From Octopus sinensis (lineage: Eukaryota), in NCBI RefSeq assembly GCF_006345805.1, contig NC_043023.1, forward strand, positions 3,658,001 through 3,722,000: 64,000 nucleotides of DNA, given 5' to 3'. The stretch's first letter is position 1; the number at the start of each line of letters is the position of its first letter. Shown piece after piece: positions 11,097 to 64,000 of this stretch. The notes under the pieces are model-generated. The model saw only the letters and a program-made list of their open reading frames with translations, did not search any database and was not told where the DNA came from. The translations under genes were made by a program, and so were the position numbers.

Positions 11097-11990
11097 GGCA
11101 GCGAGCTGGCAGAAACGTTAGCACGCCGGGCGAAATGCTTGGCGGTATTTCGTCTGCCGCTACGTTCTGAGTTCAAATTCCGCCGAGGTCGACTTTGCCT
11201 TTCATCCTTTCGAGGTCAATTAAAATAACTACCTATTTCTTTACTACCCACAAGGGGCTAAACACAGAGAGGACAAACAAGGACAGACAAATGGATTATG
11301 TCGATTATATCGACCCCAGTGCGTAACTGGTACTTATTTAATCGATCCCGAAAGAATGAAAGGCAAAGTCGACCTCGGCGGAATTTGAACTCAGAACATA
11401 ACGCGGCAGACGAAATACCTATTTCTTTACTATCCACAAGGAACTAAACACAGAGGGGACAAACAAAGACAGACAAACGGATTAAGTCGATTATATTGAC
11501 CCCAGTGCGTAACTGGTACTTAATTTATCGACCCCGAAAGAATGAAAAGTAAAGTTGACCTCGGCGGAATTTGAACTCAGAACGTAACGGCAGACGAAAT
11601 ACCGCAAAGCATTTCGCCTGGCGTGCTAACGTTTCTGCCAGCTCACCACCTTATTGATTAAATAAGTACCAGTTACGCACTTGGGTCGATATAATCGACT
11701 TAATCCCTTTGTCTGTCCTTGTTTGTCCCCTCTGTGTTTAGCCCCTTGTGGGTAGTAAAGAGATAGGTATTTCGTCTGCTGCTACGTTCTGATTTCAAAT
11801 TCTGTCGAGGTCAACTTTGCCTTTCATCCTTTTGGGGTCGATTAAAATAAGTATCAGTTACGCACTGGGGTCAATGTAATCGACTTAATCCGTTTGTCTG
11901 TCCTTGTTTGTCCTCTCTGTGTTTAGCCCCTTGTGGGTAGTAAAGAAATAGGTATTTTGTCTGCTGCTATGTTCTGAGTTCAAATTCCAC
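11097..11990. mobile_element. SINE B multimer (+) interrupted by an inverted SINE B dimer (11231-11652, -)
   Basis: Plus copy breaks at ..ggtcaattaaaataa and resumes at gattaaataagtacc (11653). Confidence 0.85.
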
Positions 11991-12914: not shown

Positions 12915-14012
12915 GCAGAGGTGTTGTTTAACCCCAGGTCAAAGACCTAGGATCAAGGATCTCCAACACTACATTATCTGATGTGTAGTATAGGAGTTAG
13001 TATTAGTGGTTAAGGCTGTTGTTGTTGTTTAGCCCCAGGTCAGTCCTGATCCAGCAGACCAATGATCAAAGAGGTTCCAGCTGTGACCATCCCATCTTTT
13101 ATTCAGGCATAGTGTAGCATGGACTACATTATCAAATGTATAGTATAGTAGTTAGTATTAGTGGTTATAGTTGGTGTTGTTTAGCCCCAGGTCAGTCCTG
13201 ATCCAGCAGACCAATGATCAAAGAGGTTCCAGCTGTGACCATCCCATCTTTTATTCAGGCATAGTGTAGCATGGACTACATTATCAAATGTATAGTATAG
13301 TAGTTAGTATTAGTGGTTATAGTTGGTGTTGTTCAGCCCTAGGTCAGTCCTGATCGAGATAGGCCAATGATCAAAGATGTTCCATTTGTGACCATCCCAT
13401 CTTTTATTCAGGCATAGTGTATCTAGGACTACATTATCTAATGTACAGTATAATAGTTAGCATTAGTAGCTATTGTTATTACTGTTTAGCCCCAGGACAA
13501 CCCTGATCCAGTAGTCCTATGATCATAGATGTTCCAGCTGTGACCATCCCATCTTTTATTCAGGCCTAGTGTATCTAGGACTACATTATCTAATGTATAG
13601 CATAGTAGTCAATATTAGTCGCTGTATTTTTTATTATTTAGCCCTAGGTCAGTCCTAAACCAGTAAACCTATGATCTAAGATGTTCCAGCTGTGAGCATC
13701 CCATCTTTTTTTTTCAGGCATCGTGTATGTAGGACTACATTATTTAATGTACAGTATTTAGCATTAGGGGTTATAGGTGTTTAGTCACTTCAAGGCAGTC
13801 CTGATTTGGTAGATTTGCAATCAAAGATGGACGTTCCATTTGTGACCATCCAATCTTTTATTCAGACATAGTATATCTAGGACTACATTACTTAATGTTA
13901 ATGGCTGTAGTTTTGGGTTTTAGCCCCAGGTCAGTCGTGATCCAACAGATCTATGATCAAATATGCTCCAGCTGTGATCATCAAATCTTTTTGTCAAGTA
14001 TAGTGTATCAGG
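12915..14012 (+). repeat. ~152-bp satellite family C, ~7 units
   Basis: ccc(c/t)agg recurs near 13033, 13185, 13337, 13490, 13642, 13924. Confidence 0.9.
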
Positions 14013-14026
14013 GACTGTATTAAAAA

Positions 14027-14519
14027 ATCAGAGAGAGATAGAGAGAGAAAGAGAGAGAGAAAGTGAATAAGAGGGTGTGAAAGAGAGAGGGGGTGGGAGA
14101 GAAAGAGTGATTGATAAAGAGTGAAAGAAAGATAAAGAGTGAAAGAGAAAGAGTGAGAGAGAAAGAGTGAGAGAGAAAGAGTGAGAGAGAAAGAGTGAGA
14201 GAGAAAGAGTGAGAGAGAAAGAGTGAGAGAGAAAGAGTGAGAGAGAAAGAGTGAGAGAGAAAGAGTGAGAGATAAAGTGTGAAAGAGAGAGGAAGTGTGA
14301 GAGAGAAAGGGTGAGAGGAGGAGAGGAAGAGAGAGAGAGAGAGAGGAAGAGTGAAAGAGGGAGAGAAAGAGTGAAAGAGAGAGAGAAAGAGTGAAAGAGA
14401 GAGAGAAAGAGTGAAAGAGAGAGAGAAAGAGTGAAAGAGAGGAAGAGTGAAAGAGAGAGAGGAAGAATGAAAGAAAGAAAGGTAGAGTGAAAGAGAAGTG
14501 AAAGCAAGAGAAGAAGAAT

Positions 14520-15799: not shown

Positions 15800-16405
15800 A
15801 TACCTATTTCTTTACTACCCACAAGGGGCTAAACACAGAGAGGACAAACAAGGAAAGACAAATGGATTAAGTCGATTATATCGACTCCAGTGCGTAACTG
15901 GTACTTATTTAATCGACCCCAGAAGGATGAAAGGCAAAATAGACCTCGGCGGAATTTAAACTCAGAACGTAACGGCAGACAAATACCTATTTCTTTACTA
16001 CCCACAAGGGGCTAAACACAGAGGGGACAAACAAGGACAGACAAAGGGATTAAGTCGATTGCATCGACCCCAATGCATAACTGGTACTTAATTTATCGAC
16101 CCCAAAAGGAAGAAAGGCAAAGTCATCTTCGATGGAATTTGAACTCAGAACGTAGTGGCAGACGAAATACCTATTTCTTTGTTACCCACAAGGGGCTAAA
16201 CGCTGAGGATACAAACAAGGACAGACAAACGGATTAAGTCAATTGCATCGACCCCAGTGCGTAACTGGTACTTATTTAATCGACCCCGAAAGGATGAAAG
16301 GCAAAGTCGACCTCGGTGGAATTTGAACTCAGAACGTAACAGCAGGCGAAATACCGCTAAGCATTTCATCTGGCGTGCTAACGTTTCTGTCAGCTCGCCA
16401 CCTTA
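15800..16405 (-). mobile_element. SINE B with head plus three tandem body units
   Basis: Units joined at GAAATAG|GTATTT. Confidence 0.9.
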
Positions 16406-17254: not shown

Positions 17255-18187
17255 TTGTTTGTCCCCTCTGTGTTTAGCCCCTTGTGGGTAGTAAAGAAAT
17301 AGGTATTTCGTCAGCCATTACGTTTTGAGTTCAAATTCCACCAAGGTCGACTTTGCCTTTCATCCTTTCGGGGTCGATTAAATAAGTACCAGTTACACAC
17401 TGGGGTCGATATAATCGACTTAATCCGTTTGTCTGTCCTTGTTTGTCCCCTCTGTGTTTAGCCCCTTGTCGGTAGTAAAGAAATAGGTATTTTGTCTGTC
17501 TTTACTTTCTGAGTTCAAATTCTGCCGAGGTCGACTTTGCCTTTCATTCTTTCGGGGTCGATTAAATAAGTACCAGTTACACACTTAATCGACTTAATCC
17601 CTTTGTCTGTCCTTGTTTGTCCTCTCTGTGTTTAGCCCCTTGTGGATAGTAAAGAAATAGGTATTTCGTCAGCCGTTACGTTCTGAGTTCAAATTCCTCC
17701 GAGGTCGACTTTACCTTTCATCTTTTCGGGGTCGATAAATTAAGTACCAGTTACGCACTGGGGTCGATTTAATCAACTTAATCCGTTTGTCTGTCCTTAT
17801 TTGTCTCCTCTGTGTTTAGCTCCTTGTAGGTATTAAAGAAATAAGTATTTCATCTGCTGCTGCGTTCTGCGTTCAAATTCCGCTGAGGTCAACTTTGCCT
17901 TTCATCCTTTCGGGGTCGATTAAATATGTACCAGCTACACACTGGGGTCGATATAATCGACTTAATCCGTCTGTCTGTCCTTGTTTGTCCCCAAAGAAAT
18001 AGGTATTTCGTCTGCCGCTACGTTCCGAGTTCAAATTCCACCGAGGTCGACTTTGCCTTTCATCCTTCGGGGTCGATTAAATAAGTACCAGTTACGCACT
18101 GGGGTCGATGTAATCTACTTAATCCATTTGTCTGTCCTTGTTTGATCCCTCTGTGTGTAGCCCCTTGTGGGTAGTAAAGAAATAGGT
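17255..18187 (+). repeat. Headless tandem array of ~5.5 SINE B body units (~160-185 bp)
   Basis: Junction aaagaaata(g/a)gtattt near 17300, 17485, 17657, 17840, 17998. Confidence 0.9.
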
Positions 18188-23779: not shown

Positions 23780-24422
23780 GGCGGCCAGCTGGCAGAATCG
23801 TTAGCACGCCGGGCGAAATGCTTAGCAGTATTTCGTCTGCCGCTACGTTCTGAGTTCAAATTCGGCCGAGGTTGACTTTGCCTTTCATCCTTTCAGGGTC
23901 GATAAATTAAGTACCAGTTACACACTGGGGTCGATGATGTAATCGACTTAATCCCTTTGTCTGTCCTAGTTTGTCCCCTCTATGTTTAGCCCCTTGTGGG
24001 CAATAAAGAAATAAGAAACGTTAGCACACCGGGTGAAATACTTGGTGGTATTTCATCTGCCGTTACATTCTGAGTTCAAATTCCTCCGAGGTCGACTTTG
24101 CTTTTCATCCTTTCGGGGTCGATAAATTAAGTACCAGTTATGCACTGGGGTCGATGTAATCGACTTAATCCCTTTGTCTGTCCTTGTTTGCCCTCTCTGT
24201 GTTTAGCCCCTTGTGGGTAGTAAAGAAATACGTATTTTGTCTGCCGCTACGTTCTGAGTTCAAATTCCACCAAGGTCGACTTTGCCTTTCATCCTTTCGG
24301 GGTCGATAAATTAAGTACCAGTTACGCACTGGAGTCGATGTAATCGACTTAATCCGTTTATCTGTCCTTGTTTGTCCCCTCTGTGTGTAGCCCCTTGTGG
24401 GCAGTAAAGAAATAGGTATTCC
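23780..24422 (+). mobile_element. SINE B multimer with two heads and three bodies
   Basis: Junctions GAAATAAG|AAACGTTAGC (~24014) and GAAATAC|GTATTT (~24231). Confidence 0.9.
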
Positions 24423-26819: not shown

Positions 26820-28226
26820 TTAATCCTTTTGATACAATATTTCTGTTGAAATACGCAGCCTTTGTTTGAATTAATTCTGAAAATAGCCAAGGATTAAGTA
26901 AAATAACTTTGTCGTTATGAAGCTGATGTTTGGAACATTAATTAACAGGAAATTTTGATGAAAGGTTTGAATTTAGACCACTTTAACCCCTTAGTTACCA
27001 TGGGCCGTTGCCAGCTTCGCCTGGCCTCTGTGCTGGTAGCACGTAAAAAGCACCATCCGATCATGGCTGTTTGCCAGCCTCGCTTGGCCTCCGTGCTGGT
27101 GGCACATAAAAAGCACCATCCGATCGTTAAATTTGACAGAGTAATTTGGATGTTAAAGAGTTAAGCTGGCCCTGTCTAGCCCAAACATTTTACTTCTATG
27201 TTCAAACCAATAAGGTCCAGCCTCTCTCACCTCCCCTACAATGTCATTCTAAAAATAAATAATTGCATCATTGAAATTTCAAAGCTATGAGATAATGTAC
27301 ATGATTAATTCAAAATAATGCGAATAAATAAGCATTACATTTGAGAGTTAATGCTAAAGAGTTAAACTAGCCATATTCATCGCTAATATTTAACCTGTTT
27401 TATGCTCAAGCTAGCCAGATCCAGCTTATCATACCTACCCTATAATGTTGTTCTAAAAATAGACATTCATATTATTCTTTTCTACTCTAGGCACAAGGCC
27501 TGAGATTTTGGGGGAAGGGAGAACCAGTCGATTAGATTGACCCCAGTACACAACCGATACTTATTTCATCAACCTCGAAAGGATGAAAGGCAAAGTCGAC
27601 CTCGGCGGAATTTGAACCCAGAATGTGAAAATAGATGAAATACCACTAAGCATTTCACCCAGCGTGCTAACATTTCTTATTTCTTTATTGCCCACAAGGG
27701 GCTAAACATAGAGGGGACAAACAAGGACAGACAAACGGATTAAGTCGATTATATCGACCCCAGTGCGTAACTGGTACTTATTTAATCGACCCCCGAAAGG
27801 ATGACAGGCAAAGTCGACCTCGGCTGAATTTGAACTCAGAACATAACGGCAGACGAAATACCGCTAAGCATTTCACCAGGCGTGCTAACGACTCTGTCAG
27901 CTCGCTGCCTTAGATATTCATATTATTGACATCCCAATGCTACAAGATAATGTATGTTTAATTCAAACCAATGTGAAAAAGCTTTACATTTGACAGAAGA
28001 AGCTGACTGTTAAAGGGTTAAACTGGCCATATCCAACTCAGATATTCAAACCCATTTTATTTCAAGCTGACCAGAACCAGCTTCTCACACCTACGCTACA
28101 ATGTCATTCTAAAAATAAAGAGTCATAACATTGAAATCTCAAAGCTACAAGATAAGCCATGATTAATTTAAAACAATGTAAATAAGCATTACATTTAAGA
28201 GACTAATCTGATTACTAAACAGTTAA
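26820..28226 (+). mobile_element. Cluster of TTAA-bounded piggyBac-like MITE units (~200 bp)
   Basis: TTAACCC-type start at 26983; units end aa(g/c)(a/g)gTTAA at 27164, 27365, 28021, 28226. Confidence 0.6.
27472..27912 (-). mobile_element. SINE B dimer inserted into a MITE unit
   Basis: Two Nin-like boxes with GAAATAAG|AAATGTTAGC junction. Confidence 0.85.
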
Positions 28227-29184: not shown

Positions 29185-30055
29185 TAAGGTAGGATGGCCA
29201 CAGTTGGAAACATCTGATCACAGTTCCGCTGAATCAGGACCAACCTGGTGTTGAACAACAAATAATGCTAACTACTATACTGTACATTAAATAATGTAGT
29301 CCTAGATACACTATGTCTGAATAAATGAAGGGATGGTCACGGCAGGAACTACTTTGATCATAGGTGTGTCAGATCAAGCCTGACCAGGGGCTAAACAACA
29401 CTAATACTATCTAATACTCTGCACATTAGATAATGTAGTCCTAGATACACTATGTCTGAATAAATGAAGGGATGGTCACGGCAGGAACTACTTTGATCAT
29501 AGGTGTGTCAGATCAAGCCTGACCAGGGGCTAAACAACACTAATACTATCTAATACTCTGCACATTAGATAATGTAGTCCTAGATACACTATGTCTGAAT
29601 AAATGAAGGTGGTCACGGCACGCAGGAACTACTTTGATCATAGGTGTGTCAGATCAAGCCTGACCAGGGGCTAAACACACTAATACTATCTAATACTCTG
29701 CACATTAGATAATGTAGTCCTAGATACACTATGTCTGAATAAATGAAGGGATGGTCACGGCAGGAACTACTTTGATCATAGGTGTGTCAGATCAAGCCTG
29801 ACCAGGGGCTAAACAACACTAATACTATCTAATACTCTGCACATTAGATAATGTAGTCCTAGATACACTTTGCCAGAATAAAAAGTTGGATGGTCACAGC
29901 TGGAACGTCTTTGATAATATGTCTGCTAAATTGGGCTGACCCAGGGTTAAACAACAACTGTAGCCACTATCTACTACTATATGATACACTGTCTAATGTA
30001 GTCCTAGATACACGGTGACTGAACATAAGCCAGGATGGTTGCACCTGTGACAATT
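29185..30055 (-). repeat. Satellite family C, 139-bp variant, ~6 units (four near-identical)
   Basis: cctagatac at 29301, 29440, 29579, 29719, 29858, 30003. Confidence 0.9.
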
Positions 30056-31848: not shown

Positions 31849-31867
31849 AAATATTATTAATACAAAA

Positions 31868-32285
31868 CCCATTTCTTTACTACCCAAAAGGGCCTAAACA
31901 CAGAGAGGACAAACAAGGACAGACAAACGGATTAAGTCGATTATATCAACCCCAGTGCGTAACTGGTACTTATTTAATCGACCCTGAAAGGATGAAAGGC
32001 AATGTCGACCTCGGCAGAATTTGAACTCAGAACATAACGGCAGACGAAATACCTATTTCTTTACTACCCACAAGGGGCTAAACACAGAGAGGACAAACAA
32101 GGACAAACGGGTTAAGTCGATTATATCGACCCCAGTGCGTAACTGGTACTTATTTAATCGAACCCGAAAGGATGAAAGGCAAAGCTGACCTCAAGAGAAT
32201 TTGAACTCAGAACGTAACAGCAGATGAAATACCGCTAAGCATTTCGCCCAGCATGCTAACGTTTCTGCCAGCTCGCCACCTTAGT
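31868..32285 (-). mobile_element. SINE B dimer
   Basis: GAAATAG|GTATTT junction ~32050. Confidence 0.9.
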
Positions 32286-33395: not shown

Positions 33396-33814
33396 CGATG
33401 AATACACACCAACCAGGACATGCGAATGACAAAATTCCTCCCTCACAGCAATCTCGTTAACATAACATTAATTAGATTATCAACATTGTGGCCTACATAA
33501 CTACCTTGTGTCAAAATCTCGTTACATAGTCCTCAGAGACATGCTAAAAATAGCAGCCAAATCGCTTGTCAACACTAATGGAAGGACACCCAAGATAATA
33601 TAGTCCTTGATGTACGATTTTTAAAAAGTGGGATGGCCACAGATGGATTGTTTTATATGTCTGCCTGCTCCATCAGAGCTAAAACTGGTGTAAAGAATAT
33701 TCAGTACTTTAAAAAACTAAATGGGTGTATATATACACGTGTATATATAATAGTAGGCCAAACATATTTACATACAATTTTCTGTTAAGGACTCTACTTT
33801 CATATTTTTAATAT

Positions 33815-35745
33815 TCTTTTACTCTTTTACTTGTTTCAGTCATTTGACTGTGGCCATGCTGGAGCAACCCCTTCAGTCGAGCAAATCGACCCCGGGACTT
33901 ATTCTTTGTAAGCCCAGTATTTATCTATCTATCGGTCTCTTTTCTTTTACTCTTTACTTGTTTCAGTCATTTGACTGTGGCCATGCTGGAGCAACCCCTT
34001 CAGTCGAGCAAATCGACCCCGGGACTTATTCTTTGTAAGCCCAGTATTTATTCTATCGGTCTCTTTTCTCTTTTACTCTTTTACTTGTTTCAGTCATTTG
34101 ACTGTGGCCATGCTGGAGCAACCCCTTCAGTCGAGCAAATCGACCCCGGGACTTATTCTTTGTAAGCCCAGTATTTATTCTATCGGTCTCTTTTCTCTTT
34201 TACTCTTTTACTTGTTTCAGTCATTTGACTGTGGCCATGCTGGAGCAACCCCTTCAGTCGAGCAAATCGACCCCGGGACTTATTCTTTGTAAGCCCAGTA
34301 TTTATTCTATCGGTCTCTTTTATCTTTTACTTGTTTCAGTCATGATTGACTGTGAGGGCCATGCTGGAGCAACCCCTTCAGTCGAGCAAATCGAACCCGG
34401 GACTTATTCTTTGTAAGCAAACCCAGTAGTTGTATTCTATGGTCTCTTTTCTCTTTTATCTTTTTACTTGTTTCAGTCATTTGACTGTGGCCATGCGGAG
34501 AGCAACCCCTTCAGTCGAGCAAATCGACCCCGGGACTTATTCTTTGTAAGCCCAGTATTTATTCTATCGGTGTTCTTTTCTCTTTTACTCTTTTACTTGT
34601 TTCAGTCATTTGAGTGTGGCCATGCTGGAGGCAACCCCTTCAGTCGAGCAAATCGACCCCGGGACTTATTTTGTGTAAGCCCAGTATTTATTCTATCGGT
34701 CTCTTTTACTCTTTTACTTGTTTCAGTCATTTGACTGTGGCCATGCTGGAGCAACCCCTTCAGTCGAGCAAATCGACCCCGGGACTTATTCTTTGTAAGC
34801 CCAGTACTTATTCTATCGGTCTCTTTTCTCTTTTACTTGTTCAGTCATTTGACTGTGGCCATGCTGGAGCAACCCTTCAGTCGAGCAAATCGACCCCGGG
34901 GACTATTCTTTGTAAGCCCAGTACTTATTCTATCGGTCTCTTTTCCCTTTTACTTGTTTCAGTCATTTGACTGTGGCCATGCTGGAGCAACCCCTTCAGT
35001 CGAGCAAATCGACCCCGGGACTTATTCTTTGTAAGCCCAGTACTTATTCTATCGGTCTCTTTTCCCTTTTACTTGTTTCAGTCATTTGACTGTGGCCATG
35101 CTGGAGCACCGCCTTCAGTCGAGCAAATCGACCCCGGGACTTATTCTTTGTAAGCCCAGTACTTATTCTATCGGTCTCTTTTCCCTTTTACTCTTTTACT
35201 TGTTTCAGTCATTTGACTGTGGCCATGCTGGAGCACCGCCTTCAGTCGAGCAAATCGACCCCAGGACTTATTCTTTGTAAGCCCAGTACTTATTCTATCG
35301 GTCTCTTTTACCTTTTACTCTTACTTGTTTCAGTCATTTGACTGTGCCATGATGGAGCAACCCTTCAGTCGAGCAAATCGACCCCGGGACTTATTTTTGT
35401 AAGCCCAGTACTTATTCTATCGGTCGCTTTTCTCTTTTACTCTTTTACTTGTTTCAGTCATTTGACTGTGGCCATGCTGGAGCAACCCCTTCAGTCGAGC
35501 AAATCGACCCCGGGACTTATTCTTTGTAAGCCCGTACTACTTCTTCACGGTCTCTTTTCCCTTTTACTCTTTTACTTGTTTCAGTCATTTGACTGTGGCC
35601 ATGCTGGAGCAACCCCTTCAGTCGAGCAAATCGACCCCGGGACTTATTCTTTGTAAACCTACTAACCGCTAAGTTATGGGGACGTGAACACACCAGCATC
35701 GGTCGTCAAGCAATGTTGGGGGAGACAAACACAGACACACAAATA
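33815..35745 (-). repeat. Tandem array of ~15 x ~127-bp SINE A 3' termini
   Basis: ttcagtcat recurs about every 120-135 bp from ~33834 to ~35580, then runs into the rest of the tail. Confidence 0.95.
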
Positions 35746-40027: not shown

Positions 40028-40338
40028 AACATATACATACACGCACAAGTACTACAAAGACAGACATACACATACATACACTATCATGTATACGTACACA
40101 TGCACACACGCGAATACAAACACAGTCTCGTGCACACGCGTATACGTACACGCGCTCGCGCACAAGCGTATACACATGGATGCGCACACACATACACACC
40201 TATATATGCATAGACACACGCACAATCACACGTATATACATTCATTCTAACATGCACACACACACACACACACACACATGAGAGAAGGTAGTAGACATCA
40301 ATACACAATACAAAATCATACGATGGATCTGCTTCGAT

Positions 40339-40438
40339 NNNNNNNNNNNNNNNNNNNNNNNNNNNNNNNNNNNNNNNNNNNNNNNNNNNNNNNNNNNNNN
40401 NNNNNNNNNNNNNNNNNNNNNNNNNNNNNNNNNNNNNN
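40339..40438. other. Assembly gap (100 N)
   Basis: Run of exactly 100 N, probably a placeholder of unknown size. Confidence 0.98.
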
Positions 40439-40558
40439 AGCTGTGACCATCCCCAACTTTTATTCAGGCATAGTGCATCTAGGACTACATTTTCTAATGT
40501 ATAGTACAGTAGTTAGCATCAGTGGCTATATTTGTTGTTTAACCCTAGGTCAGTCTTG

Positions 40559-40601
<43 letters not shown>

Positions 40602-40769
40602 GGCCCTTTGGTGTAGGCCCTTACTATCAAGTCTTTACCATCTTATCTCTCCTCTCTCCTCAGCAAAAGAGACTGATAGAATAAGGTCCTGGGGTCGCTT
40701 TGCTTGACTAAAGGTGGTGCTCCAGCATGGCCACAGTCAAATGACTGAAACAAATAAAAGGATTTAATA

Positions 40770-42767: not shown

Positions 42768-42975
42768 TGGTGGCGAGCTGGGTGAAATACTTAGCGGTAT
42801 TTCATCTGACATTACTTTTTCATTCAAATTCCGCCGACATCGACTTTGCCTTTCATCCTTTCGGGGTCGATTAAATAAGTACCAGTTACACAATGGGGTC
42901 GATGTAATCGACTTAATCCCTTTGTCAGTCCTTGTTTATCCCCTCTATGTGTAGCCCCCTGTGGGCAATAAAGAA
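42768..42975 (+). mobile_element. SINE B
   Basis: Head, Nin-like box, tail. Confidence 0.85.
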
Positions 42976-43522
42976 ATATATATATATATATGTATGTGTG
43001 TATGTATATATATATATATAATATATATAAGTTCATATTTGGTTTGCAAGATTCTTGATGTGAATTCGTTTGTTGAAAGAAATACTATTGAACTTTGGGA
43101 CGGTCAATATGCCAGTAATGATAAACACACACACTGGTTTGGTTCTTTATTGTTAATGGGTTAGTTCCTCCATTAACCAATGTATTGATCAGCCGTTTTT
43201 TTACTATTTTTCAAACTCATATGTTAAACAATTTGGTCGAACAATTAACCATTCAACTGTTCGATATTGTTAGTGTTGCTGTTACTTATTTCATCACCTT
43301 GTTGCAATCTCTTCAGTGACATGTCACTTTACTTCCATTTCTTTTGAACTTATGTTCCAGCGTTGGGATTTGTCCGAGATGAGTATGTGAGTGTGTGTAT
43401 GTCAGCATGTGTGTGTGTGTTTATACATAATTGTGTGCATCCATATATGTGTGTGTGTGTGTGTTTTTTTTAAATACTGTGCCATTTTTCATATACACAA
43501 GTTAGTGGTTTTCTCTGTGTAT

Positions 43523-44722: not shown

Positions 44723-45224
44723 CTATAGACGTAGATGTCTCTCTTACACAAAAACACACACACACACACACACACTCGAAGCATGTTATGAGTACCCCCC
44801 TATCAAAACCTTCCCATCTCCCCCCTCGTGTATCATCAAAGAGGAAGTGATTCTAAACAGGAAGTCCTAATGAGGTCACCTTCAATTAGTTTGACCCATA
44901 AATAAAATTTGTCTTCCTGTCTCTCTCACTGACAATTTTTTCTTCCCTGTATTCTTTATGTGGCTTGCACTGTCTTAGGGGGTGGTCACTTGTGTACATA
45001 TGTGTGTGTATGTGTATTGGGTGATGTTGTGGTTAAGAATATTCCAGCCATGACCATCCTGTGTAATTCTATCTGAAATCTGGAACTGTCTTGTACGAGT
45101 TGTCCTTCCGTTTTTTTAAGACAGTTGTGTGATTTGAGGGACGTTTGACTGTTATTTCTAGCATCTTCATTAACTGCATAGAGGATTCCTCATTGTGTAT
45201 GTGCTAATTTGAGTAGTCCAGCAG

Positions 45225-45690
45225 ACACAGGGTCAAAGATGTTCCAACTGTGACCATCCCATCTTTTATTCAGGCATAGTGTATCTAGGAGTACATTATC
45301 TAATGTATAGTATTGTAGTCTCTATTAGTGATTATGGTTGTTGTTGCTTAGCTCCTGGCCAGTCCTAATCCAGTCGACCTATGACCAAACATGTTCCAGC
45401 TGTGACCATCCCATCTTTTATTAAGACATAAGTGTATCTAGGACTACAATTTCTAATGTATAGTACAGTAGTTAGTATCAGTGGCTATATTTGTTGTTTA
45501 ACCCTAGGTCAGTCTTGATCCAACCGACCTATGATCAAAGCTCATCCAGCTGTAACCATCCTATCTCTTAAGACACAGTGTACCTAGGACTACATCATCT
45601 AATGTGTAGTATAGTAGTTTGTATCAGTGGCTATATCTCTTGTTGTTTAGTTCCAGGACAATCCTGATCCAGCTGTGACCATCCCAATTT
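45225..45690 (+). repeat. Satellite family C, ~3 units (also 40439-40557, 47165-47220, and 48445-48950 on -)
   Basis: accatcc..ctaggactaca motif spaced ~150 bp. Confidence 0.85.
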
Positions 45691-45711
45691 TTATCCATTC
45701 TTAGTTTAAGA

Positions 45712-47160
45712 TTGTGCATGGGTCAGTGGTTAGAGCTTTGGGCTGACAACCATGAGGTAATGAGTTCAACTCCCTGACCAGGCTGTGTGTTGTTTACTTA
45801 AGCAAGACACTTTATTTCACATTGCTCCAGTTCACTCAACTTTAGAAATGAGTTGTGACATCACTGGTGCCAAGCTGTATCGGCCTTTGCCTTTCTCTTG
45901 GATAATATCAGTGGCACGGAGAGGGCAGGCTGGTATGCATGGACGACTACTGGTCTTCCATAGACCACTTTGCTCAGACTTGTACTTTAGAGAGGAACTT
46001 TCTAGGTGCAATCCTATGGTCATTCGTGACTGAAGGGGGTCTTTACCCATTATCCTATGTATTGGATTGTCTGGGAAGTTCTAGTCGATTTTTAAAGGAA
46101 AGAAAAAGGTCAATAAATACTTGCCATTACATTTTTAATCAACTAAATATGAACCATTTTCTTGCACAATGCATCTCCATCTTTCCTTTAACTTGAAAAT
46201 ACTCTCTTCCCAGAATTGAGGTGGTTTCATGGCAAAGAATTCATCAAGGTATCTTTTTATGTCATCCAAGGAATTGAAGTTTTTACCATTAAGACTATTC
46301 TGCAGAGACCTGAATAAGTGGAAATCCGAAGGAGCAATATCTGGTGAATATGGAGGGTGGGGTAACACATCCCAGCCGAGCTGCAGCAATTTTTGTCTGG
46401 TTCCCAAAGCATCAAGTGCTGAAAATGAACTTTCTTATCTTCCATTTTAAAGGGTTACAGAATTAACACAGGTTATAGGAACATAAACCTTCTTCCAAGA
46501 AAAGATAGCTTAAACTGTGCTCTAAATGGAGGTGTAGTCAAATCCTATTTTATGGACTCAACCATGTTCTAAAATAAGTCGAAAGGTAAGCTACTATAAA
46601 TCGGCCGAGCTGCAGCAATTTTTGTCTGGTTCCCAAAGCATCAAGTGCCGAAAATGAACTTTCTTATCTTCCATTTTAAAGGGTTACAGAATTAACACAG
46701 GTTATAGGAACATAAACCTTCTTCCACGAAAAGATAGCTTAAACTGTGCTCTAAATGGAGGTGTAGTCAAATCCTATTTCATAGACTCAACCATGTTCTA
46801 AAACAAGTTGAAATGTAAGCTACTATAAATTGGCACAAACTTTCTGGACAACCCAATACATATAATGGTGTGGAGGGTAGGCTGGTATGCATGGGTGACT
46901 GCTGATCTTCCATAAACAAACCTTGCCCAGACTTGTTCCTCGGAGGGGAACTTTCTAGGTGCAATCCTACGGTCATTCATGATTTGATTGGGGTCTTTAC
47001 CCTTTACTCCATGTACCTATAATGGCATGGAGAGCAGGGGCTGGTATGCATGGGCGACTGCTTGCCTTCCATAAACAAACCTTGCTCGGACTTGTTCCTC
47101 GGAGGGGAACTTTCTAGGTGAAATCCTATGGTCACTCATGACCAAAAGGGGTCCTTCTCT
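45712..47160 (+). mobile_element. SINE E whose ~150-bp tail is triplicated, with a mariner inserted between units 1 and 2
   Basis: ggctggtatgcatgg..gaactttctaggtg at ~45925, 46880, 47038. Confidence 0.8.
46058..46858 (-). mobile_element. Mariner deletion derivative with both TIRs, TA TSD and internal ~230-bp tandem duplication
   Basis: ORF 46135-46407 ..HPPYSPDIAPSDFHLFRSLQNSL..; N-terminus MEDKKVHFQHLMLWE; TIRs 46058-46089 and 46827-46858. Confidence 0.95.
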
Positions 47161-47708
47161 TTTCACGACAGTAGTTAGTATTAGTGGCTATAGTAGTTAT
47201 TTAGCCCTGGGTCAGTCCTGGTGGTGTTAATCATGATGGTGGTGATAATGGTGGTATTGTTCATGATGTTTGGCACTGCTTTATTTTATAGTGTTGTTGT
47301 TGGTGGTGGTGATGGGTAGTGCAAATTTTGTAATTAGTATAACGAGCTAAATAGCTAAACACATCAGTGATCTTCTTAATTAATTAAATCTCTACAAGAA
47401 TAGAAGTGTCGAGTGGGAGGTGAGCTGGGAAGTTGTCTACTATTTCAGTGTTAATTACTACATCTCAATCAACCAACTCGTTTATTCTGGATATTGTCTG
47501 AAATATTTGTGTGTATGTGTACCTTTTCATACACGGTTCAGTCAGCAGTCTGTGGCCATGCTGGGGCATCACCTTACAGGGTTTTATTTGAACAATTCAG
47601 TTCTTGAACTTCATTTTTTTAAAAAAAATCTTGGTACTCCTTGCTGATAAACAAGTTACTGGATGCAAACAAACCAACACTGGCTGTCAAACAGTATTGG
47701 GGACAAAT

Positions 47709-47945: not shown

Positions 47946-49188
47946 GAGGGAAAATCTTTAGACCATAGACTCTGGGACCATTTGAGCATGGTCGTTGCCA
48001 GTGCCACCGGACTTGCTCCTGTGCAGGTAGCACGTAAAAACACCTCAGCGTGGTCATTGCCAGAACCATCTGACTGGCTCTCATGCCAGTGGCACGTAAA
48101 AGTACCCAGTATACTCTGAGTGGTTGGCGTTAGGAAGGGCATCCAGCTGTAGAAACTTTGTCAGATCAGATTGGGGCCTGGTGCAGCCTCTGGCTCACCA
48201 GTCCTCAGTCAAACCATCCAACCCATGCTAGCATGGAAAGCGGATGTTAAACGACGATGACGACGATGATGATGATGATGATGATCATTGTGATCATCCA
48301 TGAATATCTGTTTTTCATGCTGGCATGGGTTGGAAAGTTTGACTGGAGCTAACAAGTCAGAAAGTTGCACCAGGTTCTGATCTGATTTGGCTCGGTTTCT
48401 ATGCCTAGGTACCGTGTGTGTGTGTGTGGGTGAGTGTTATAGAATGGGAAGATCACATCTGGGACATCTTTGACCATGGGTCTGCTGGATTAGGATTGAC
48501 CTGAGGCTGAACAACTATAATCATTAATACTAACTACTATATACATTAGCTGATGTAGTCCTAGATACACTATGTCTGATATAAGATGGGAAGGTCACAG
48601 CTGGAACATGTTTGATCATAGTCTTGCTGGATCAGAACTGACCTGGGGTTAAACAACAACTATAGCCACTCATAGTAACTACTACTGTATACATTTCATA
48701 ATATAGTCCTAGGTAGACTATGCCTCACTAAAAGAAAGGTCACAGCTGGAACATGTTTGATCATAGGATGCTGGATCGGGACTGACCTAGGGTTAAACAA
48801 CAACTATAGCCACTTATAGTAACTACTACTGTATACATTAGATAATGTAGTCCTAGCTGCACTATGGCTGAATAAAAGATGGGATGGTCACAGCTGGAAC
48901 ATGTTTGATCATAGGTCGACTGGATCGTGACTGGCCCAGGGCTAAACAAGTATGAAATTTGTCACTGTTGTACTTTATGGTTGAATGGTTTTGCAGTAGG
49001 AAGGACTTTTGTGGCCATGTGTAAGGCAACATGTCACTTGCGCAACCAACCAACCATGAATAAATTCATATGAAACAGGAAGAAAGCTTAGAAGAAAGAG
49101 AAAAAAAACATTGGAATGGGGTGGAGTTGGGGTAGAAATAGGGTATGTGGTGTGGGTATTGTGTGGTATGTGGGGGTGTGTATTGTAT

Positions 49189-50590
49189 GGGCCTGCAGGA
49201 CTAGACCAAGGGGTTGTTAGAAGGCTGGACCATATGAAAATTTTCCTGTTTCATGGTGGTAGGCCCCTTTGGGATGTCACATGCTGAGCACCTTCAGTTA
49301 GGGGCCCAGGCTCTGCTGCTCGTCAAATTGACGGAAAAATCTGTCAAGGTATCCCAGGGATGTTAGAAGGCTGGACTATATGACAATTTTCCTGTTTCAT
49401 GGTGGTAGGCCTGTTTGGGATGTCACATGCTGAGCTACCTTCTTCAGTTAGGGGCCCAGTCTCTGCTGCTCGTCAAATTGACGGAAAAATCTGTCGAGGT
49501 ATCCCTGGGGTGTTAGAAGGCTGGACTGTATGACAATTTTCCAGTTTCATGGTGGTAGGCCCCTTTGGGATGTCACGTGCTCAACTACCTTCTTCAGTTA
49601 GGGGCCCAGTCTCCGCTGCTCGTCAAATTGACGGAAAAATCTGTCAAGGTATCCCAGGGATGTTAGAAGGCTCGACTGTATGACAGTTTTCCTGTTTCAT
49701 GGTGGTAGGCCTGTTTGGGATGTCACATGCTGAGCACCTTCTTCAGTTAGGGGCCCAGGCTCTGCTGTTCGTCAAATTGACGGAAAAATCTGTCGAGGTA
49801 TCCCAGGGATGTTAGAAGGCTCGACTGTATGACAGTTTTCCTGTTTCATTGGGATGTCACATGTTGAGCTACCTTCTTCAGTTAGGGGCCCAGTCTCTGC
49901 TGCTCGTCAAATTGACGGAAAAATCTGTCGAGGTATCCCTGGGGTGTTAGAAGGCTGGACTGTATGACAATTTTCCAGTTTCATGGTGGTAGGCCCCTTT
50001 GGGATGTCACGTGCTCAACTACCTTCTTCAGTTAGGGGCCCAGTCTCCGCTGCTCGTCAAATTGACGGAAAAATCTGTCAAGGTATCCCAGGGATGTTAG
50101 AAAGCTGGACTGTATGACAATTTTCCTGTTTCATGGTGGTAGGCCTGTTTGGGATGTCACATGCTGAGCACCTTCTTCAGTTAGGGGCCCAGGCTCTGCT
50201 GTTCGTCAAATTGACGGAAAAATCTGTCGAGGTATCCCAGGGATGTTAGAAGGCTCGACTGTATGACAGTTTTCCTGTTTCATTGGGATGTCACATGCTG
50301 AGCACCTTCTTCAGTTAGGGGCCCAGTCTCTGCTGCTCGTCAAATTGACGGAAAAATCTGTCAAGGTATCTGGTCGCTCTCTGACAGGTTTATGGTTGAG
50401 TCTATGGCAGTGGAGACCTCCAGCATTCTTGGTCCCCCTCCCCTCAGACTATATCCCTGCTCACCATTACTGGGGCAGAGATTGCTGTCTGCAAGTGCAA
50501 GCCCCTCAAGTCAGTGGCTGCCCCAGTGCATCTCCCTCACTACCATCCAGGGCAATGCTTCTTTTCCCATTCTGCCTGCTGGGGTCATGA
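49189..50590 (+). pseudogene. CRE-type non-LTR retrotransposon RLE domain remnant, its catalytic core amplified into a 149-bp satellite (8 units)
   Basis: 49189: GPAGLDQGVVRRLDHMKIFLFHGGRPLWDVTC* (cf. EPxGLxRxDGKRPDGxT..WD.TC); after the array SLSDRFMVESMAVETSSILGP..IAVCKC..QWLPQCISLTTIQGNA (cf. PxAVETxGxxGP..QRISLAIxRGNA). Confidence 0.8.
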
Positions 50591-50729
50591 GAAATGTTTC
50601 TATATTGTAAGAGGTGAGATTTTCCATATTCGAGTAATACAGGGTCTCCGTTATCCATTCACATTTAGGACGAGGCGCTGCAGTTATTTAACCCAAGGTC
50701 AGCCCTGATCGCTCAGATCTATGGTCGAA

Positions 50730-51135
50730 GATGATGGTGGTGGTGGTGGTGGAGAAGATGTGTGGTGTTGATGGTTGTGTTTGGGTGGTGATGGTTGTGG
50801 TGGTTATGGTCTTTGGGTTTTCGTAATGGTGGTGGTGGAGATGTGATGTTGATGGTAGTGTTTGGATGGTGGCGGTTGTGGTCTTTGGGTTTTGGTGGTG
50901 GTGTCAGTGGCGGTGATGGTAGTTGTAGTAGTGATGATGGTGGTGGTTGTGATGGTAGTGGTCTTGGTCATGGCAGTGGTTGTGGTGATAATGATGTTGG
51001 ATATCATGGTGGTATTAGAAGTCTTGATTCAGTAGTGGTGGGGGTGTTAAGCAAATGATTATGTTGGTAGTGGTGGTGGTTGTCATCACTGATGGGGGCG
51101 GGGGTGTTGTACTGATGATGTTGATGATGATGTTT
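50730..51135. repeat. GGT/GAT trinucleotide-rich low complexity
   Basis: Direct reading. Confidence 0.9.
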
Positions 51136-51172
51136 TAAACCAATATTTCATCCTAATTATTCTTTATTCCAG

Positions 51173-51293
51173 ATTACTTCCTGTTGCTGTGGAAGACCAA
51201 ATTTGGGAAGTGTTGATACTCTTGGATGTGAAGCAGTCTTTATAACTGTTAACTCTCTTTTTCTAAGATATTGGATTTTTGCTATTTCCTAAG
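51173..51293 (+). other. Candidate 121-bp exon, apparently non-coding
   Basis: Acceptor ttctttattccag| and donor AAG|gtaagc in unique sequence; all three frames contain a stop. Confidence 0.3.
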
Positions 51294-51364
51294 GTAAGCA
51301 GACAAATCTAAATTATATTCTGTTTAGTTTCCCTATCATATAAATTTTTAATGCTTTGGGACGG

Positions 51365-51510
51365 TCATTATACCAACAATAACACAAGCACTGATTCAAT
51401 ATCATTTCTTTATTGTTAGTCATTTGCTTAAATAATTGGATATTTAACAAACTGACTAACAATAAAGAAGTGATATGGAATCAGTGCTTGTGTTATTGTT
51501 GGTATAATGA
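51365..51510. repeat. Palindrome: 58-bp arms (2 mismatches), 30-nt partly paired spacer
   Basis: 51365-51422 vs reverse complement of 51453-51510. Confidence 0.95.
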
Positions 51511-51744
51511 TCCACCCAAGACAACAAGTTCTGTTTCAACATGAATTCCCATTAAAAAAATCTGAAGTAAATGATTATAGTTATGGCTTAATCTCAGGGG
51601 AACGGTAAAAGATGATGTTGGATTTGCAGATGTGGCTGTGTGAGTGAGAAGTTTCCTTTGAAGCCATACGGTTAGAGGTTCAATCCCTGTGGGAGTGCAC
51701 TGTCAGCTAACTTTCTGTACTGTATATTATAGCTATGTTTTACA

Positions 51745-52600
51745 TGGTGGTGGTCGTGGTGCATTTGACGGTAGTGATGGTGTGTTTGACGACAATGCTT
51801 TTGACAATGATGATGATAATTGTGTTTGACAGTGATGATGATGGTGCATTTGACGGTTGTGATGGTGTGTTTGACAATGCATGTGGTGATGGCTGCTTTT
51901 GGCAGTGATGATGATTATTTCATTATGCCGGCTACCATTTAATAATGCTGACTAGTAAGTCAGTTTCCCGTGGTAGCATCATGGTTATATCAAGATGATG
52001 TAGGATTAATATAATAATACCAAAAAATCTAGGATGGAATTCATGAATATCTAATATATCGTGATAATGATGGTACATTTGATGGTGGTGATGACAGTGC
52101 TTTTGACAGTGATGATGGTGCATTTGACGGTGGTGATGATGAGTGTGTTTGACGGTGGTGGTTGTGTTTGACAGCAGTACATTTGATGATGACAGTGATG
52201 ATGGTGCATTTGACGGTGGTGATAATGGTGATGACATTGTTTATGACAGTGATGATGGTGTATTTGACGGTGGTGATGATGAGTGTGTTTGATGGTGGTG
52301 GTGGTGTTTGACAGTAGTACATTTGATGATGACAGTGATGATGATGGTGCATTTGACAGTGATGATGATGAGTGTTTGACGGTGGTGGTGTTTGACAGCA
52401 GTACATTTGATGATGACTGATGATGGTGCCTTTGACGGTGGTAATGATGTTTTTGATGGTGGTAGTGATGACATTTTTGACAACGATTTTGGTGTTCTTT
52501 CATACTGATAAGTACTTTTCACAATAGCAACAATGATGATGATGATGATGACTGTTATTTGAAGATAAGGGTGCCTTTGATGACGATGATGATGATGAGC
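51745..52600. repeat. GATGGTGCATTTGACGGT minisatellite within (GAT)n
   Basis: Motif gtgcatttgac / gtgtttgac recurs more than 15 times. Confidence 0.9.
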
Positions 52601-56659: not shown

Positions 56660-56970
56660 CATGATGACGACGATGATAGTGATGATGACGATGATGATAA
56701 TGATGGTGATGATGATGACAATGGTGACGATGGTGATGATGACGATGGCGATAATGATGATGATGATGGTGATGATAGTGATGATGATGACGACGATGGT
56801 GATGACGATGGTGATGACGATGGTGATGACGATGGTGATGATGACGACGATGTAATGATGACGATGGTAATGATGACGATGGTGATGATGATGATGATGA
56901 CAATGGTAATGATGACGGTGGTCATGATGACAATGACAAGTGATGATGGCAGTGGTGATGGTGATGAATT
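56660..56970. repeat. (GAT/GAC/GGT)n trinucleotide tract
   Basis: Direct reading. Confidence 0.95.
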
Positions 56971-62759: not shown

Positions 62760-64000
62760 TGTCATTAGACTGTGGCACCGCCTTAAAGAATTCCTTAGTT
62801 GGATGGATTGACTTCAATTCTTTTTTTTTTTTTTAATTTGGTACTCATCTAATTATTCTATTGGTCACTTTTGCCAAACTGCTAAGTTATGGGGCTGTAA
62901 ACACACCAACACCAGTTATCAAGTAGTGGTGAGATGCACCACACACATACACACACACATGTAATAGGCTTCTTTCAGTTTCTTATTTCTTTATTGCCCA
63001 CAAGGGGCTAAACATAGAGGGGACAAACAAAGACAGACAAAAGGATTGTCGATTGATTATATCAACCCCAGTGCGTAACTGGTACTTAATTTATCGACCT
63101 TGAAAGGATGAAAGGCAAAGTCGACCTTGGTAGAATTTGAACTCAGAACGTAACGGCAGGCGAAATACCACTCAGCATTTCACCCAGCGTGCTAACGTTT
63201 CTGCCAGCTCAGAAATAGGCTTCTTTCAGTTTCTCCCCTTCCAAATCCACTCAAGTCTTAGGTTTGACCCAAGTCTATAGTGGAAAACATGCAGTGGGAT
63301 TGAACCCGGAACCGTATAGTTGGGAAGTAAACTACTTACCACACCTGTATACCTCTGTACCTACACACACACACACACCGCATATACACACGATGGGCTT
63401 CTGTCAGTGTCTGTCTACCAAATCCATTCACAAAGCTTTAGTCAGCCTGGGGTTATAAAAGAAAACATTCCCCCCCCCAACATGCCATGCAGTGGGACTG
63501 AACCCAGAACCATATGGCTTAGGAAGGAAACAAGCGTCTTACCCCACAGCCACACCTGTTTACTTGGAAGCTATAAAATTTGCTGACTTCATTTCCTATG
63601 AAAATATTAATCTTCCTTTCTTACATATTTGTATTGTCCTTTGAAATGTGCGTATGTACCGAATCCTATTTTGTATTGAATCTAATTTTGATTCAACATC
63701 TTCTCCATTTTTCTATTATTGTTTATGGTATATTTATACCTATAACGATATTTTTCAAATCCTATTTTCATATTCTTATTACTTGCTCTGACTGTTTTTT
63801 TTATGAATATACTCTTTTACTCTTTTACTTGTTTCAGTCATTTGGCTGTGGCCATGCTGGAGCACCACCTTTAGTCGAAGAAATTGACCCCAGGACTTAT
63901 TCTTTGTAAACCTAGTATTTATTCTATCAGTCTCTTTTGCCAAACCGCTAAGTTATAGGGACGTAAACATGCCAGCATCGGTTGTCAAGCGATGTTGCGG
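62760..64000 (-). mobile_element. Diverged SINE A pieces with a SINE B (62985-63212) nested in one; SINE A tail 63810-64000 runs off the window
   Basis: Direct alignment to families A and B. Confidence 0.75.

What the first reader, a model, noticed from the sequence alone, without database searches (positions are those of the whole stretch)
49189..50590. 149-bp higher-order satellite born from the catalytic core of a CRE-retrotransposon endonuclease
Seen: eight tandem units (seven intervals of 146-150 or 134 bp). Diagnostic variants define a B-C-D trimer repeated twice (~433-bp period; the D unit carries a 15-bp deletion both times). The unit translates to R(L)D.MTIFLFHGGRP.WDVTC..SAARQ, and the unique flanks continue in register (GPAGLDQG before; SLSDRF..AVETSSILGP..ISL..GNA after). 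Established: CRE/R2-type non-LTR elements end in an RLE with a PD..D catalytic motif. Inference: the PD..D segment itself was amplified at a cca(a)ggg microhomology into a non-coding, roughly nucleosome-length satellite, already forming a higher-order repeat.
Basis: partly seen in the sequence, partly recalled or inferred. Interest (0 to 1): 0.75.

Follow-up and report, generated by a model that had tools for sequence, protein, structure and literature searches.

The report
Tandem array inside dead retrotransposon fragment
A 150-bp stretch from the nuclease-coding end of a dead, truncated retrotransposon copy has been duplicated head-to-tail eight times at this one spot, which is a real but ordinary kind of repeat and not shown to be a genome-wide satellite.

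Summary
Window 49211-50370 is a tandem array of eight units (146, 150, 150, 149, 135, 150, 149, 134 bp). A 434-bp trimer is present twice, and units 5 and 8 share the same 15-bp deletion.

The coding origin also holds. One unit plus its unique flanks translates, with an in-frame stop, to a 134-aa remnant. This remnant matches the C-terminal domain of a large family of PHD-RT-CCHC-nuclease proteins, some with an added UCH domain (phmmer best E 7e-12; hhalign probability 99.1%). An AlphaFold model of that domain finds R2 retrotransposon proteins as its top seven PDB matches, followed by PD-(D/E)xK nucleases.

The unit covers the D...D...K core. All units share the same stop, P-to-L change, deletion and frameshift features, so a dead copy was amplified. 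Three independent related copies each carry one unit.

Not supported:
- the breakpoints share at most 1 bp of microhomology;
- "satellite" status is unshown (one 1.16-kb array, no other copy in the sequence I could search);
- the "higher-order repeat" is explained by a single unequal exchange between unit 5 and unit 2;
- "CRE" rests only on a SLACS name given to one homologue.

TE-ORF-derived tandem repeats are already documented. Interest is low.

The parts
49189..49210 (+). 5' end of the 5'-truncated retrotransposon fragment. Unique codons GPAGLDQ, in register with the first unit. Upstream is unrelated GT-rich sequence.
   Evidence: hhalign aligns PAGLDQG to profile columns 70-76, PxGLDRG. 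DNA homology to L001 starts at 49191.
49211..50370 (+). Tandem array of eight about-150-bp units derived from the RLE catalytic core (RPD...WDxTC...KxxKY region).
   Evidence: TRF, the repeat finder, alignment A1. Unit-only peptide vs profile A2: probability 96.2%, E 2.6e-9, columns 77-127.
49211..49356 (+). U1 (146 bp). Most divergent unit, with a private 4-bp deletion. Reads in one frame with one TGA.
49357..49506 (+). U2 (150 bp). Its 3' part (from 49415) is the donor of the 3' part of hybrid unit U5.
   Evidence: (family D1)
49507..49656 (+). U3 (150 bp), identical to U6.
49657..49805 (+). U4 (149 bp), 3 mismatches to U7.
49806..49940 (+). U5 (135 bp). Hybrid unit: the 5' part with the 15-bp deletion equals U8, and the 3' part equals U2 except for 1 base. 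This is the inferred unequal-exchange junction.
   Evidence: variable-column table
49941..50090 (+). U6 (150 bp), identical to U3.
50091..50239 (+). U7 (149 bp), similar to U4.
50240..50370 (+). U8 (terminal unit with the 15-bp deletion). It runs straight into the unique 3' flank after ...GGTATC.
49415..49848 (+). First copy of the 434-bp block (U2 3' part, U3, U4, U5 5' part).
   Evidence: the repeat finder D1: 49415-49714 vs 49849-50148, 99%. TRF period 434.
49849..50282 (+). Second copy of the 434-bp block (U5 3' part, U6, U7, U8 5' part).
50371..50610 (+). Unique 3' remainder of the RLE reading frame (WSLSDRFMVESMAVETSSILGP...ISLTTIQGNAS...) up to its stop codon.
   Evidence: hhalign of this flank alone vs A2: probability 96.5%, E 8.5e-10, columns 134-194. 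ORF 50392..50610.
50611..50630 (+). Short 3' non-coding end of the element. Similarity to independent copies L002 and L003 stops here.
   Evidence: alignment A3, blastn

Best explanation
This is a local, non-functional tandem expansion inside a dead retrotransposon fragment. The fragment is 5'-truncated and about 0.45 kb when collapsed. It is the 3' end of an RLE-type non-LTR retrotransposon, from a family whose intact members are PHD-RT-CCHC-RLE proteins.

Inferred steps:
1. The element inserted with the 5' truncation typical of target-primed reverse transcription, leaving only the C-terminal nuclease codons (49189 to about 50630).
2. The copy decayed. The RPD motif changed P to L, a TGA appeared after WDVTC, and a deletion of roughly 8 codons with a frameshift arose between WDVTC and GPxSAARQ.
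3. A 150-bp segment spanning the D...D...K nuclease core (CCA(A)GGG...GGTATC) was duplicated in tandem, with essentially no microhomology at the breakpoints.
4. Unequal exchange or replication slippage between the copies built an array of about five units, which then diverged by 7-9%.
5. Recently, one out-of-register exchange between the last unit (which carries the 15-bp deletion) and the second unit added three units. This created hybrid unit U5 and the 434-bp period.

The DNA has no demonstrated function.
For: Shown:
- Array anatomy.
- Homology of the uncorrected one-frame translation of U1 plus flanks to 48 proteins in an exhaustive phmmer search (best E 7.2e-12, aligned over residues 2-128).
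- hhalign probability 99.1%, E 1.2e-18 against an 18-sequence profile of the domain. The unit alone and the flank alone each match adjoining parts of the profile.
- Long homologues carry RVT_1, PHD and sometimes UCH domains, with this domain after the RT.
- The AlphaFold2 model of the domain (pLDDT 88, pTM 0.83) hits R2Tg, R2Pm and R2Bm proteins as Foldseek ranks 1-7 (E 1.3e-6 to 2e-3, TM 0.47-0.60). Next come PD-(D/E)xK nucleases: SPARDA, EndoMS, MspJI, Hjc.
- The RT of homologue P0024 hits R2Pm and R2Tg by sequence (2.6e-7).
- Every unit has a stop in the RLE frame, and six-frame stop-free stretches are at most 107 codons.
- The shared defects are in all units. Related copies P0001 and P0020 and the profile have the full-length spacer.
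- Three independent related loci (L001, L002, L003 = L004 = L005; 65-72% DNA identity) each have one unit, contiguous across both array boundaries, and no tandem repeat of period 20 or more.
- U5 equals U8 on its 5' side and U2 on its 3' side, with 1 private change. U3 = U6. U4 and U7 differ at 3 sites.

Inferred: the order of events, truncation at insertion, and the exchange mechanism.
Against: - Only one 64-kb window of this genome was available, so I cannot exclude other arrays of the same unit elsewhere.
- The first duplication has no microhomology, so its mechanism is unknown.
- U4 and U7 differ at columns 17 and 30 in a pattern that needs an extra short conversion tract.
- No read-level support for the unit number was available.
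- The 5' boundary could reflect a later deletion or insertion rather than truncation at integration.
Confidence: 0.8

Rival explanations
1. One reading: the 150-bp unit is a true satellite family of this genome, seeded from the RLE core. On this view the locus is either its birthplace or one of many arrays, and it is already organised in higher-order repeats.
For: The unit length is in the usual satellite range. Identity between the two trimers (97-100%) exceeds identity between non-corresponding units, which differ at 4-13 of 150 positions. Because both flanks continue in register, this locus is a plausible origin.
Against: There are only 8 units (1.16 kb) and 2 trimer copies. There is no other copy in the window, none in the metagenome scan, and related loci are single-unit. 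Many unrelated TE-derived arrays of similar size occur in the same window, so this looks like a general local-duplication habit of the genome.
Confidence: 0.1
2. The array belongs to a non-autonomous subfamily of the element that already carried internal tandem repeats and transposed with them. On this view the expansion did not happen at this locus.
For: Many TEs carry internal tandem repeats. The fragment ends at a defined 3' terminus shared with other copies.
Against: All three independent related copies and all 48 protein homologues have a single unit. The graded divergence among units, together with one very recent 434-bp duplication, fits stepwise in situ growth.
Confidence: 0.05
3. The tandem copies were made during integration, by reverse-transcriptase template switching on the element RNA.
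For: Non-LTR reverse transcriptases can template-jump. The array sits in a 5'-truncated copy.
Against: Units differ by up to 13 of 150 positions, while one pair is identical. The copies therefore have very different ages, which a single integration event would not give.
Confidence: 0.03
4. Assembly artefact: the true locus has fewer or more units.
For: Tandem repeats with identical units (U3 = U6) are hard to assemble, and the window contains an N-gap elsewhere.
Against: Units carry distinct, ordered diagnostic variants that form a coherent mosaic. The window contains many other arrays assembled with similar structure.
Confidence: 0.05

Closest known systems
C-terminal CCHC + restriction-like endonuclease (RLE) module of R2 non-LTR retrotransposon proteins (R2Bm 8gh6/8ibw, R2Tg 9nl3/9dou, R2Pm 9nl2)
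   Same: The parent domain family has the same fold. R2 proteins are Foldseek ranks 1-7 for the model. The family has an RT upstream, invariant C/H knuckle residues, and invariant D (RPD), D (WD) and K (KxxKY).
   Different: A sequence profile of the domain does not reach R2 in the PDB. Intact relatives have an N-terminal PHD finger and often a C-terminal UCH/USP domain. The window copy is a dead 5'-truncated fragment with no RT.
   Same: These are RLE-bearing single-ORF non-LTR elements. One close homologue of the parent family (P0053, 61% identical to P0024 over RT-RLE) is named 'Retrotransposable element SLACS protein' in NCBI.
   Different: The name is an automatic transfer. No RT phylogeny with CRE, R2, R4, NeSL and HERO references was possible here. 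Published descriptions call CRE mostly target-specific (PMC4640811), and no such target is evident at this locus.
Tandem repeats or satellite DNAs derived from non-LTR retrotransposon ORFs: chicken HinfI/CR1 ORF2, Phodopus PROsat/L1 ORF2, harbour seal Pvc20/L1 ORF2 (listed in PMC9659126)
   Same: A piece of a LINE coding region is turned into head-to-tail non-coding repeats.
   Different: Those are abundant genomic satellites. This is a single eight-unit array that still sits inside its parent fragment, with both flanks in reading register. The source is an RLE domain rather than an APE-type ORF2.
Higher-order repeats of alpha-satellite type
   Same: A multi-monomer period (3 units, 434 bp) whose copies are more alike than neighbouring monomers are.
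   Different: There are only two copies, attributable to one unequal exchange. There is no evidence of homogenisation over a long array or of any chromosomal role.

Membership tests
RLE-type non-LTR retrotransposon (parent of the repeat unit) | C-terminal nuclease with PD-(D/E)xK (restriction-like) fold | tested here: met
   AF2 model of the homologue profile A2 (pLDDT 88). Foldseek PDB ranks 1-7 are R2 proteins (E 1.3e-6 to 2e-3), followed by PD-(D/E)xK nucleases. The window peptide matches A2 at 99.1% probability.
RLE-type non-LTR retrotransposon (parent of the repeat unit) | Non-LTR-type reverse transcriptase upstream of the nuclease in the same ORF | tested here: met
   Met in the homologues: RVT_1 in 7 of the 8 long hits scanned (the exception, P0009, showed only UCH), with the matched domain downstream of the RT. 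The P0024 RT hits R2Pm and R2Tg. The window copy itself lacks the RT because it is truncated at about 49189.
RLE-type non-LTR retrotransposon (parent of the repeat unit) | CCHC zinc knuckle immediately upstream of the nuclease | tested here: met
   Invariant H19, C21, C24, H34, C38 and near-invariant C16 in A2. Absent from the window copy (truncated).
RLE-type non-LTR retrotransposon (parent of the repeat unit) | Catalytic D...D...K residues intact in the copy at hand | tested here: not met
In every unit RPD is R(L)D and WDVTC is kept. The invariant K of KxxKY aligns to I, with a K one position earlier. There are stops and frameshifts in all units.
CRE clade | RT-domain phylogeny groups with CRE1/CRE2/SLACS/CZAR rather than R2, R4, NeSL/Utopia or HERO | not testable with these tools
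   No clade reference sequences were obtainable and the supplements with RT alignments are not held. The only evidence is the name 'SLACS protein' on homologue P0053.
CRE clade | Site-specific insertion (e.g. spliced-leader genes) as described for most members | tested here: inconclusive
   At this locus the element sits between a GT-rich tract and a 51-bp fragment of another repeat followed by a TGG-rich tract. The flanks of the three related loci share nothing. This is too few copies to judge.
Satellite DNA | Many copies per genome in long head-to-tail arrays | tested here: inconclusive
   One array of 8 units. There is no other copy in the 64-kb window or in the JGI metagenome contigs. The rest of the genome was not available.
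Higher-order repeat | Multimer period whose copies are more similar than adjacent monomers, repeated along the array | tested here: inconclusive
   The 434-bp period reaches 99% over 300 bp, against 4-13 mismatches per 150 bp between non-corresponding units. However, there are only 2 full copies, consistent with one exchange event (hybrid U5).

The most novel reading that the evidence does not exclude
This locus is the birthplace, caught early, of a satellite family that has begun to spread in this genome. It would be a rare case in which the progenitor array still lies inside its parent retrotransposon fragment with both flanks in reading register, so every step from coding sequence to higher-order repeat could be reconstructed.
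Probability: 0.08. Interest if true: 0.45.

Novelty: new member of a known kind. Interest (0 to 1): 0.2.

Why it matters
This is a clean, fully resolvable small example of how a piece of transposable-element coding sequence becomes a tandem repeat:
- the parent fragment, both breakpoints, the shared pre-existing defects and the last unequal-exchange product (hybrid unit U5) are all readable in one locus;
- it shows that the first duplication needed no microhomology.

Beyond that it is ordinary. TE-derived tandem repeats, including ones from LINE ORFs, are well documented (PMC9659126, PMC6947457), and this window alone holds about a dozen other TE-derived arrays. It would gain interest only if the unit proved abundant genome-wide or variable among individuals.

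Tried and rejected
- A Pfam scan of the collapsed peptide found no family.
- The word-indexed protein search found nothing. Only the exhaustive phmmer search found the relatives.
- The sequence profile A2 against PDB gave only chance-level hits and no R2. The link to R2 needed the structure comparison.
- Exact-protein look-ups of four window ORFs, to find the same locus or other arrays in public assemblies, found nothing on record.
- A scan of JGI metagenome contigs with an invariant 26-mer of the unit gave 0 matches.
- Literature searches for a described PHD-RT-RLE-USP architecture or for the clade ('Ambal', RLE + PHD, RLE + USP) returned nothing usable. Supplements with RT reference alignments are not held.
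- A search for the SRA run of the related contigs matched only an unrelated accession, so the organism stays unidentified.
- Rfam, tRNA and promoter/terminator scans were empty.
- I considered and rejected chance resemblance to a nuclease motif, because of the E-values and because the unit and the flank match adjoining profile segments.
- I considered and rejected a coding tandem-repeat protein, because every unit has stops.
- I considered and rejected microhomology-mediated origin at CAAGG or CCA(A)GGG, because the junction sequence does not fit.

Full report
**1. Observation**

The window is repeat-rich eukaryotic non-coding DNA. It has no Rfam hits and no tRNAs, and its long ORFs are only low-complexity.

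At 49211-50370, Tandem Repeats Finder finds a 150-bp period x 8.0 copies (88% matches) and a 434-bp period x 2.6 copies (94%).

The units are:

| Unit | Coordinates | Length (bp) |
|---|---|---|
| U1 | 49211-49356 | 146 |
| U2 | 49357-49506 | 150 |
| U3 | 49507-49656 | 150 |
| U4 | 49657-49805 | 149 |
| U5 | 49806-49940 | 135 |
| U6 | 49941-50090 | 150 |
| U7 | 50091-50239 | 149 |
| U8 | 50240-50370/3 | 134 |

In the alignment, U3 and U6 are identical, U4 and U7 differ at 3 sites, and U5 and U8 share a 15-bp deletion. Non-corresponding units differ at 4-13 sites, and U1 and U3/U6 differ from all others at 10-13.

**2. Is it derived from a nuclease gene?**

U1 plus the unique flanks reads in one frame, with one TGA, as GPAGLDQGVVRRLDHMKIFLFHGGRPLWDVTC*APSVRGPGSAARQIDGKICQGI|WSLSDRFMVESMAVETSSILGP...CISLTTIQGNAS....

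- Pfam and the word-indexed protein search found nothing.
- An exhaustive phmmer search of 1.84 billion representatives found 48 proteins at E <= 1e-3. The best was E 7.2e-12, and most aligned over residues 2 to about 125.
- The long hits are single-ORF proteins with a PHD finger, RVT_1, this domain, and in many cases a C-terminal UCH/USP domain.
- An 18-sequence alignment of the region (A2) shows an invariant C/H knuckle followed by LEPxGLDRGDGkRPDG...WDxTC...AAxxAExxKxxxY...ETxG...QRxSxAxxRGNA.
- The window peptide matches this profile with 99.1% probability (E 1.2e-18).
- The unit alone (columns 77-127) and the 3' flank alone (columns 134-194) each match independently.

The sequence profile does not reach any solved structure. 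However, an AlphaFold2 model of A2 (pLDDT 88, pTM 0.83) has R2 retrotransposon proteins from zebra finch, big-headed turtle and silkworm as its seven best Foldseek matches in the PDB (E 1.3e-6 to 2e-3). PD-(D/E)xK nucleases follow. The RT of homologue P0024 also hits R2 proteins by sequence.

So the parent is an RLE-type non-LTR retrotransposon. The 150-bp unit covers the invariant D (RPD), D (WD) and K (KxxKY) of its nuclease.

**3. State of the copy**

- Every unit has R-L-D instead of RPD.
- Every unit has a stop shortly after WDVTC: TGA directly, except in U3 and U6, which stop six codons later.
- Every unit lacks about 8 codons between WDVTC and GPxSAARQ. Relatives P0001 and P0020 and the profile retain these codons.
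- Half of the units are also frameshifted there.
- No frame on either strand is open for more than 107 codons across 49189-50630.

The defects are shared, so a dead copy was amplified.

**4. Extent of the element**

Protein and DNA homology begin at 49189-49191, and upstream lies unrelated GT-rich sequence. The frame stops at 50608-50610.

Three independent related copies were recovered from Logan assemblies. These are L001, L002 and L003 (= L004 = L005), at 65-72% DNA identity. They lose similarity to the window, and to each other, at about window 50630. This marks the element's 3' end.

Collapsed, the fragment is about 0.45 kb, which is a typical 5'-truncated 3' end. Each related copy runs uninterrupted across both array boundaries and has a single unit and no tandem repeat.

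**5. How the array grew**

The unit runs from CCA(A)GGG to GGTATC.

The variable-site table shows that U5 is a hybrid. Its 5' part, including the 15-bp deletion, equals U8. Its 3' part equals U2 except for one private change. U6 equals U3, and U7 nearly equals U4.

One out-of-register exchange between the terminal unit (now U8) and U2 of a five-unit array (U1-U2-U3-U4-U8) yields exactly the present order and the 434-bp period. Two sites in U4/U7 need an added short conversion. The older five units differ by 7-9%, so the array grew in steps over time and not in a single event.

**6. What is not shown**

- "Satellite": there is no other copy of the unit in the window or in the metagenome scan.
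- "Nucleosome length": the same window has other arrays built from dispersed repeats with periods of 127, 139, 144-152, 184, 209 and 229 bp.
- "CRE": the only pointer is the NCBI name 'Retrotransposable element SLACS protein' on homologue P0053. Published accounts list five RLE clades: CRE, R2, R4, NeSL and HERO (PMC4640811). I could not obtain reference RTs to place this family.

**7. Comparison and verdict**

Tandem repeats born from transposable elements are well known. These include ones from LINE ORFs: chicken HinfI/CR1, PROsat/L1 ORF2 and Pvc20/L1 ORF2. Non-coding TE parts are the commoner source (PMC9659126; see also PMC6947457).

This is a new, tidy instance of that kind and not a new kind. 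Interest is 0.2. It would rise only if the unit proved abundant or polymorphic genome-wide.

Noticed in passing
window 12919-14028(-), 29185-30047(+), 33593-33647(+), 40439-40555(-), 45217-45705(-), 47170-47220(-), 48435-48949(+), 50683-50733(-): A dispersed repeat family that itself occurs as short tandem arrays of 139-152-bp units (2.8-6 units). One array lies 240 bp upstream of the finding. A 51-bp inverted fragment lies about 50 bp downstream of the retrotransposon fragment's 3' end.
   Followed up: partly
window 11230-11603, 15800-16355, 17255-18184, 24048-24420, 31867-32233: SINE-like units of about 184 bp arranged in tandem (2-4 copies each, 85-91% matches), on both strands. ARAGORN and Rfam find no tRNA or other RNA family in them.
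   Followed up: partly
window 33815-35656: The largest array in the window: 127-bp unit x 14.8 copies (92% matches), with a 249-bp double period. It is built from another dispersed SINE-like sequence seen elsewhere in the window.
   Followed up: no
homologues P0008, P0009, P0013, P0024, P0038, P0140 (not in the window): Several members of the parent retrotransposon family carry a full ubiquitin C-terminal hydrolase (UCH/USP) domain after the RLE (five of the six; P0009 showed UCH but no RT), and a PHD finger at the N-terminus was detected in P0024. One is annotated only as 'Ubiquitin carboxyl-terminal hydrolase 2'. A full-text search for non-LTR + restriction-like endonuclease + ubiquitin-specific protease found no paper. 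The window copy's lineage ends right after the RLE.
   Followed up: partly
window 50735-52500 and 56669-56963: Long degenerate TGG/TGA-rich minisatellite tracts, including a 140-bp period x 2-2.5 copies at 52086-52442. They give His-rich ORFs on the minus strand, and the two regions are 65-69% similar.
   Followed up: no
window about 40340-40440: A run of N (assembly gap) inside ORF 40278..40616, shown as X in its translation.
   Followed up: no
L002:1-57 vs window 42929-42985, 27679-27727, 23964-24012, 62985-63033: A Logan contig from run SRR11869394 that carries a related copy of the element also shares a short dispersed repeat (86-90% identity) with four places in the window. This suggests that those runs come from a relative of the window's organism. 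The organism was not identified.
   Followed up: partly
window 46375-46834: A 229-bp unit x 2.0 copies at 96% identity, a recent local tandem duplication of otherwise unique-looking sequence.
   Followed up: no
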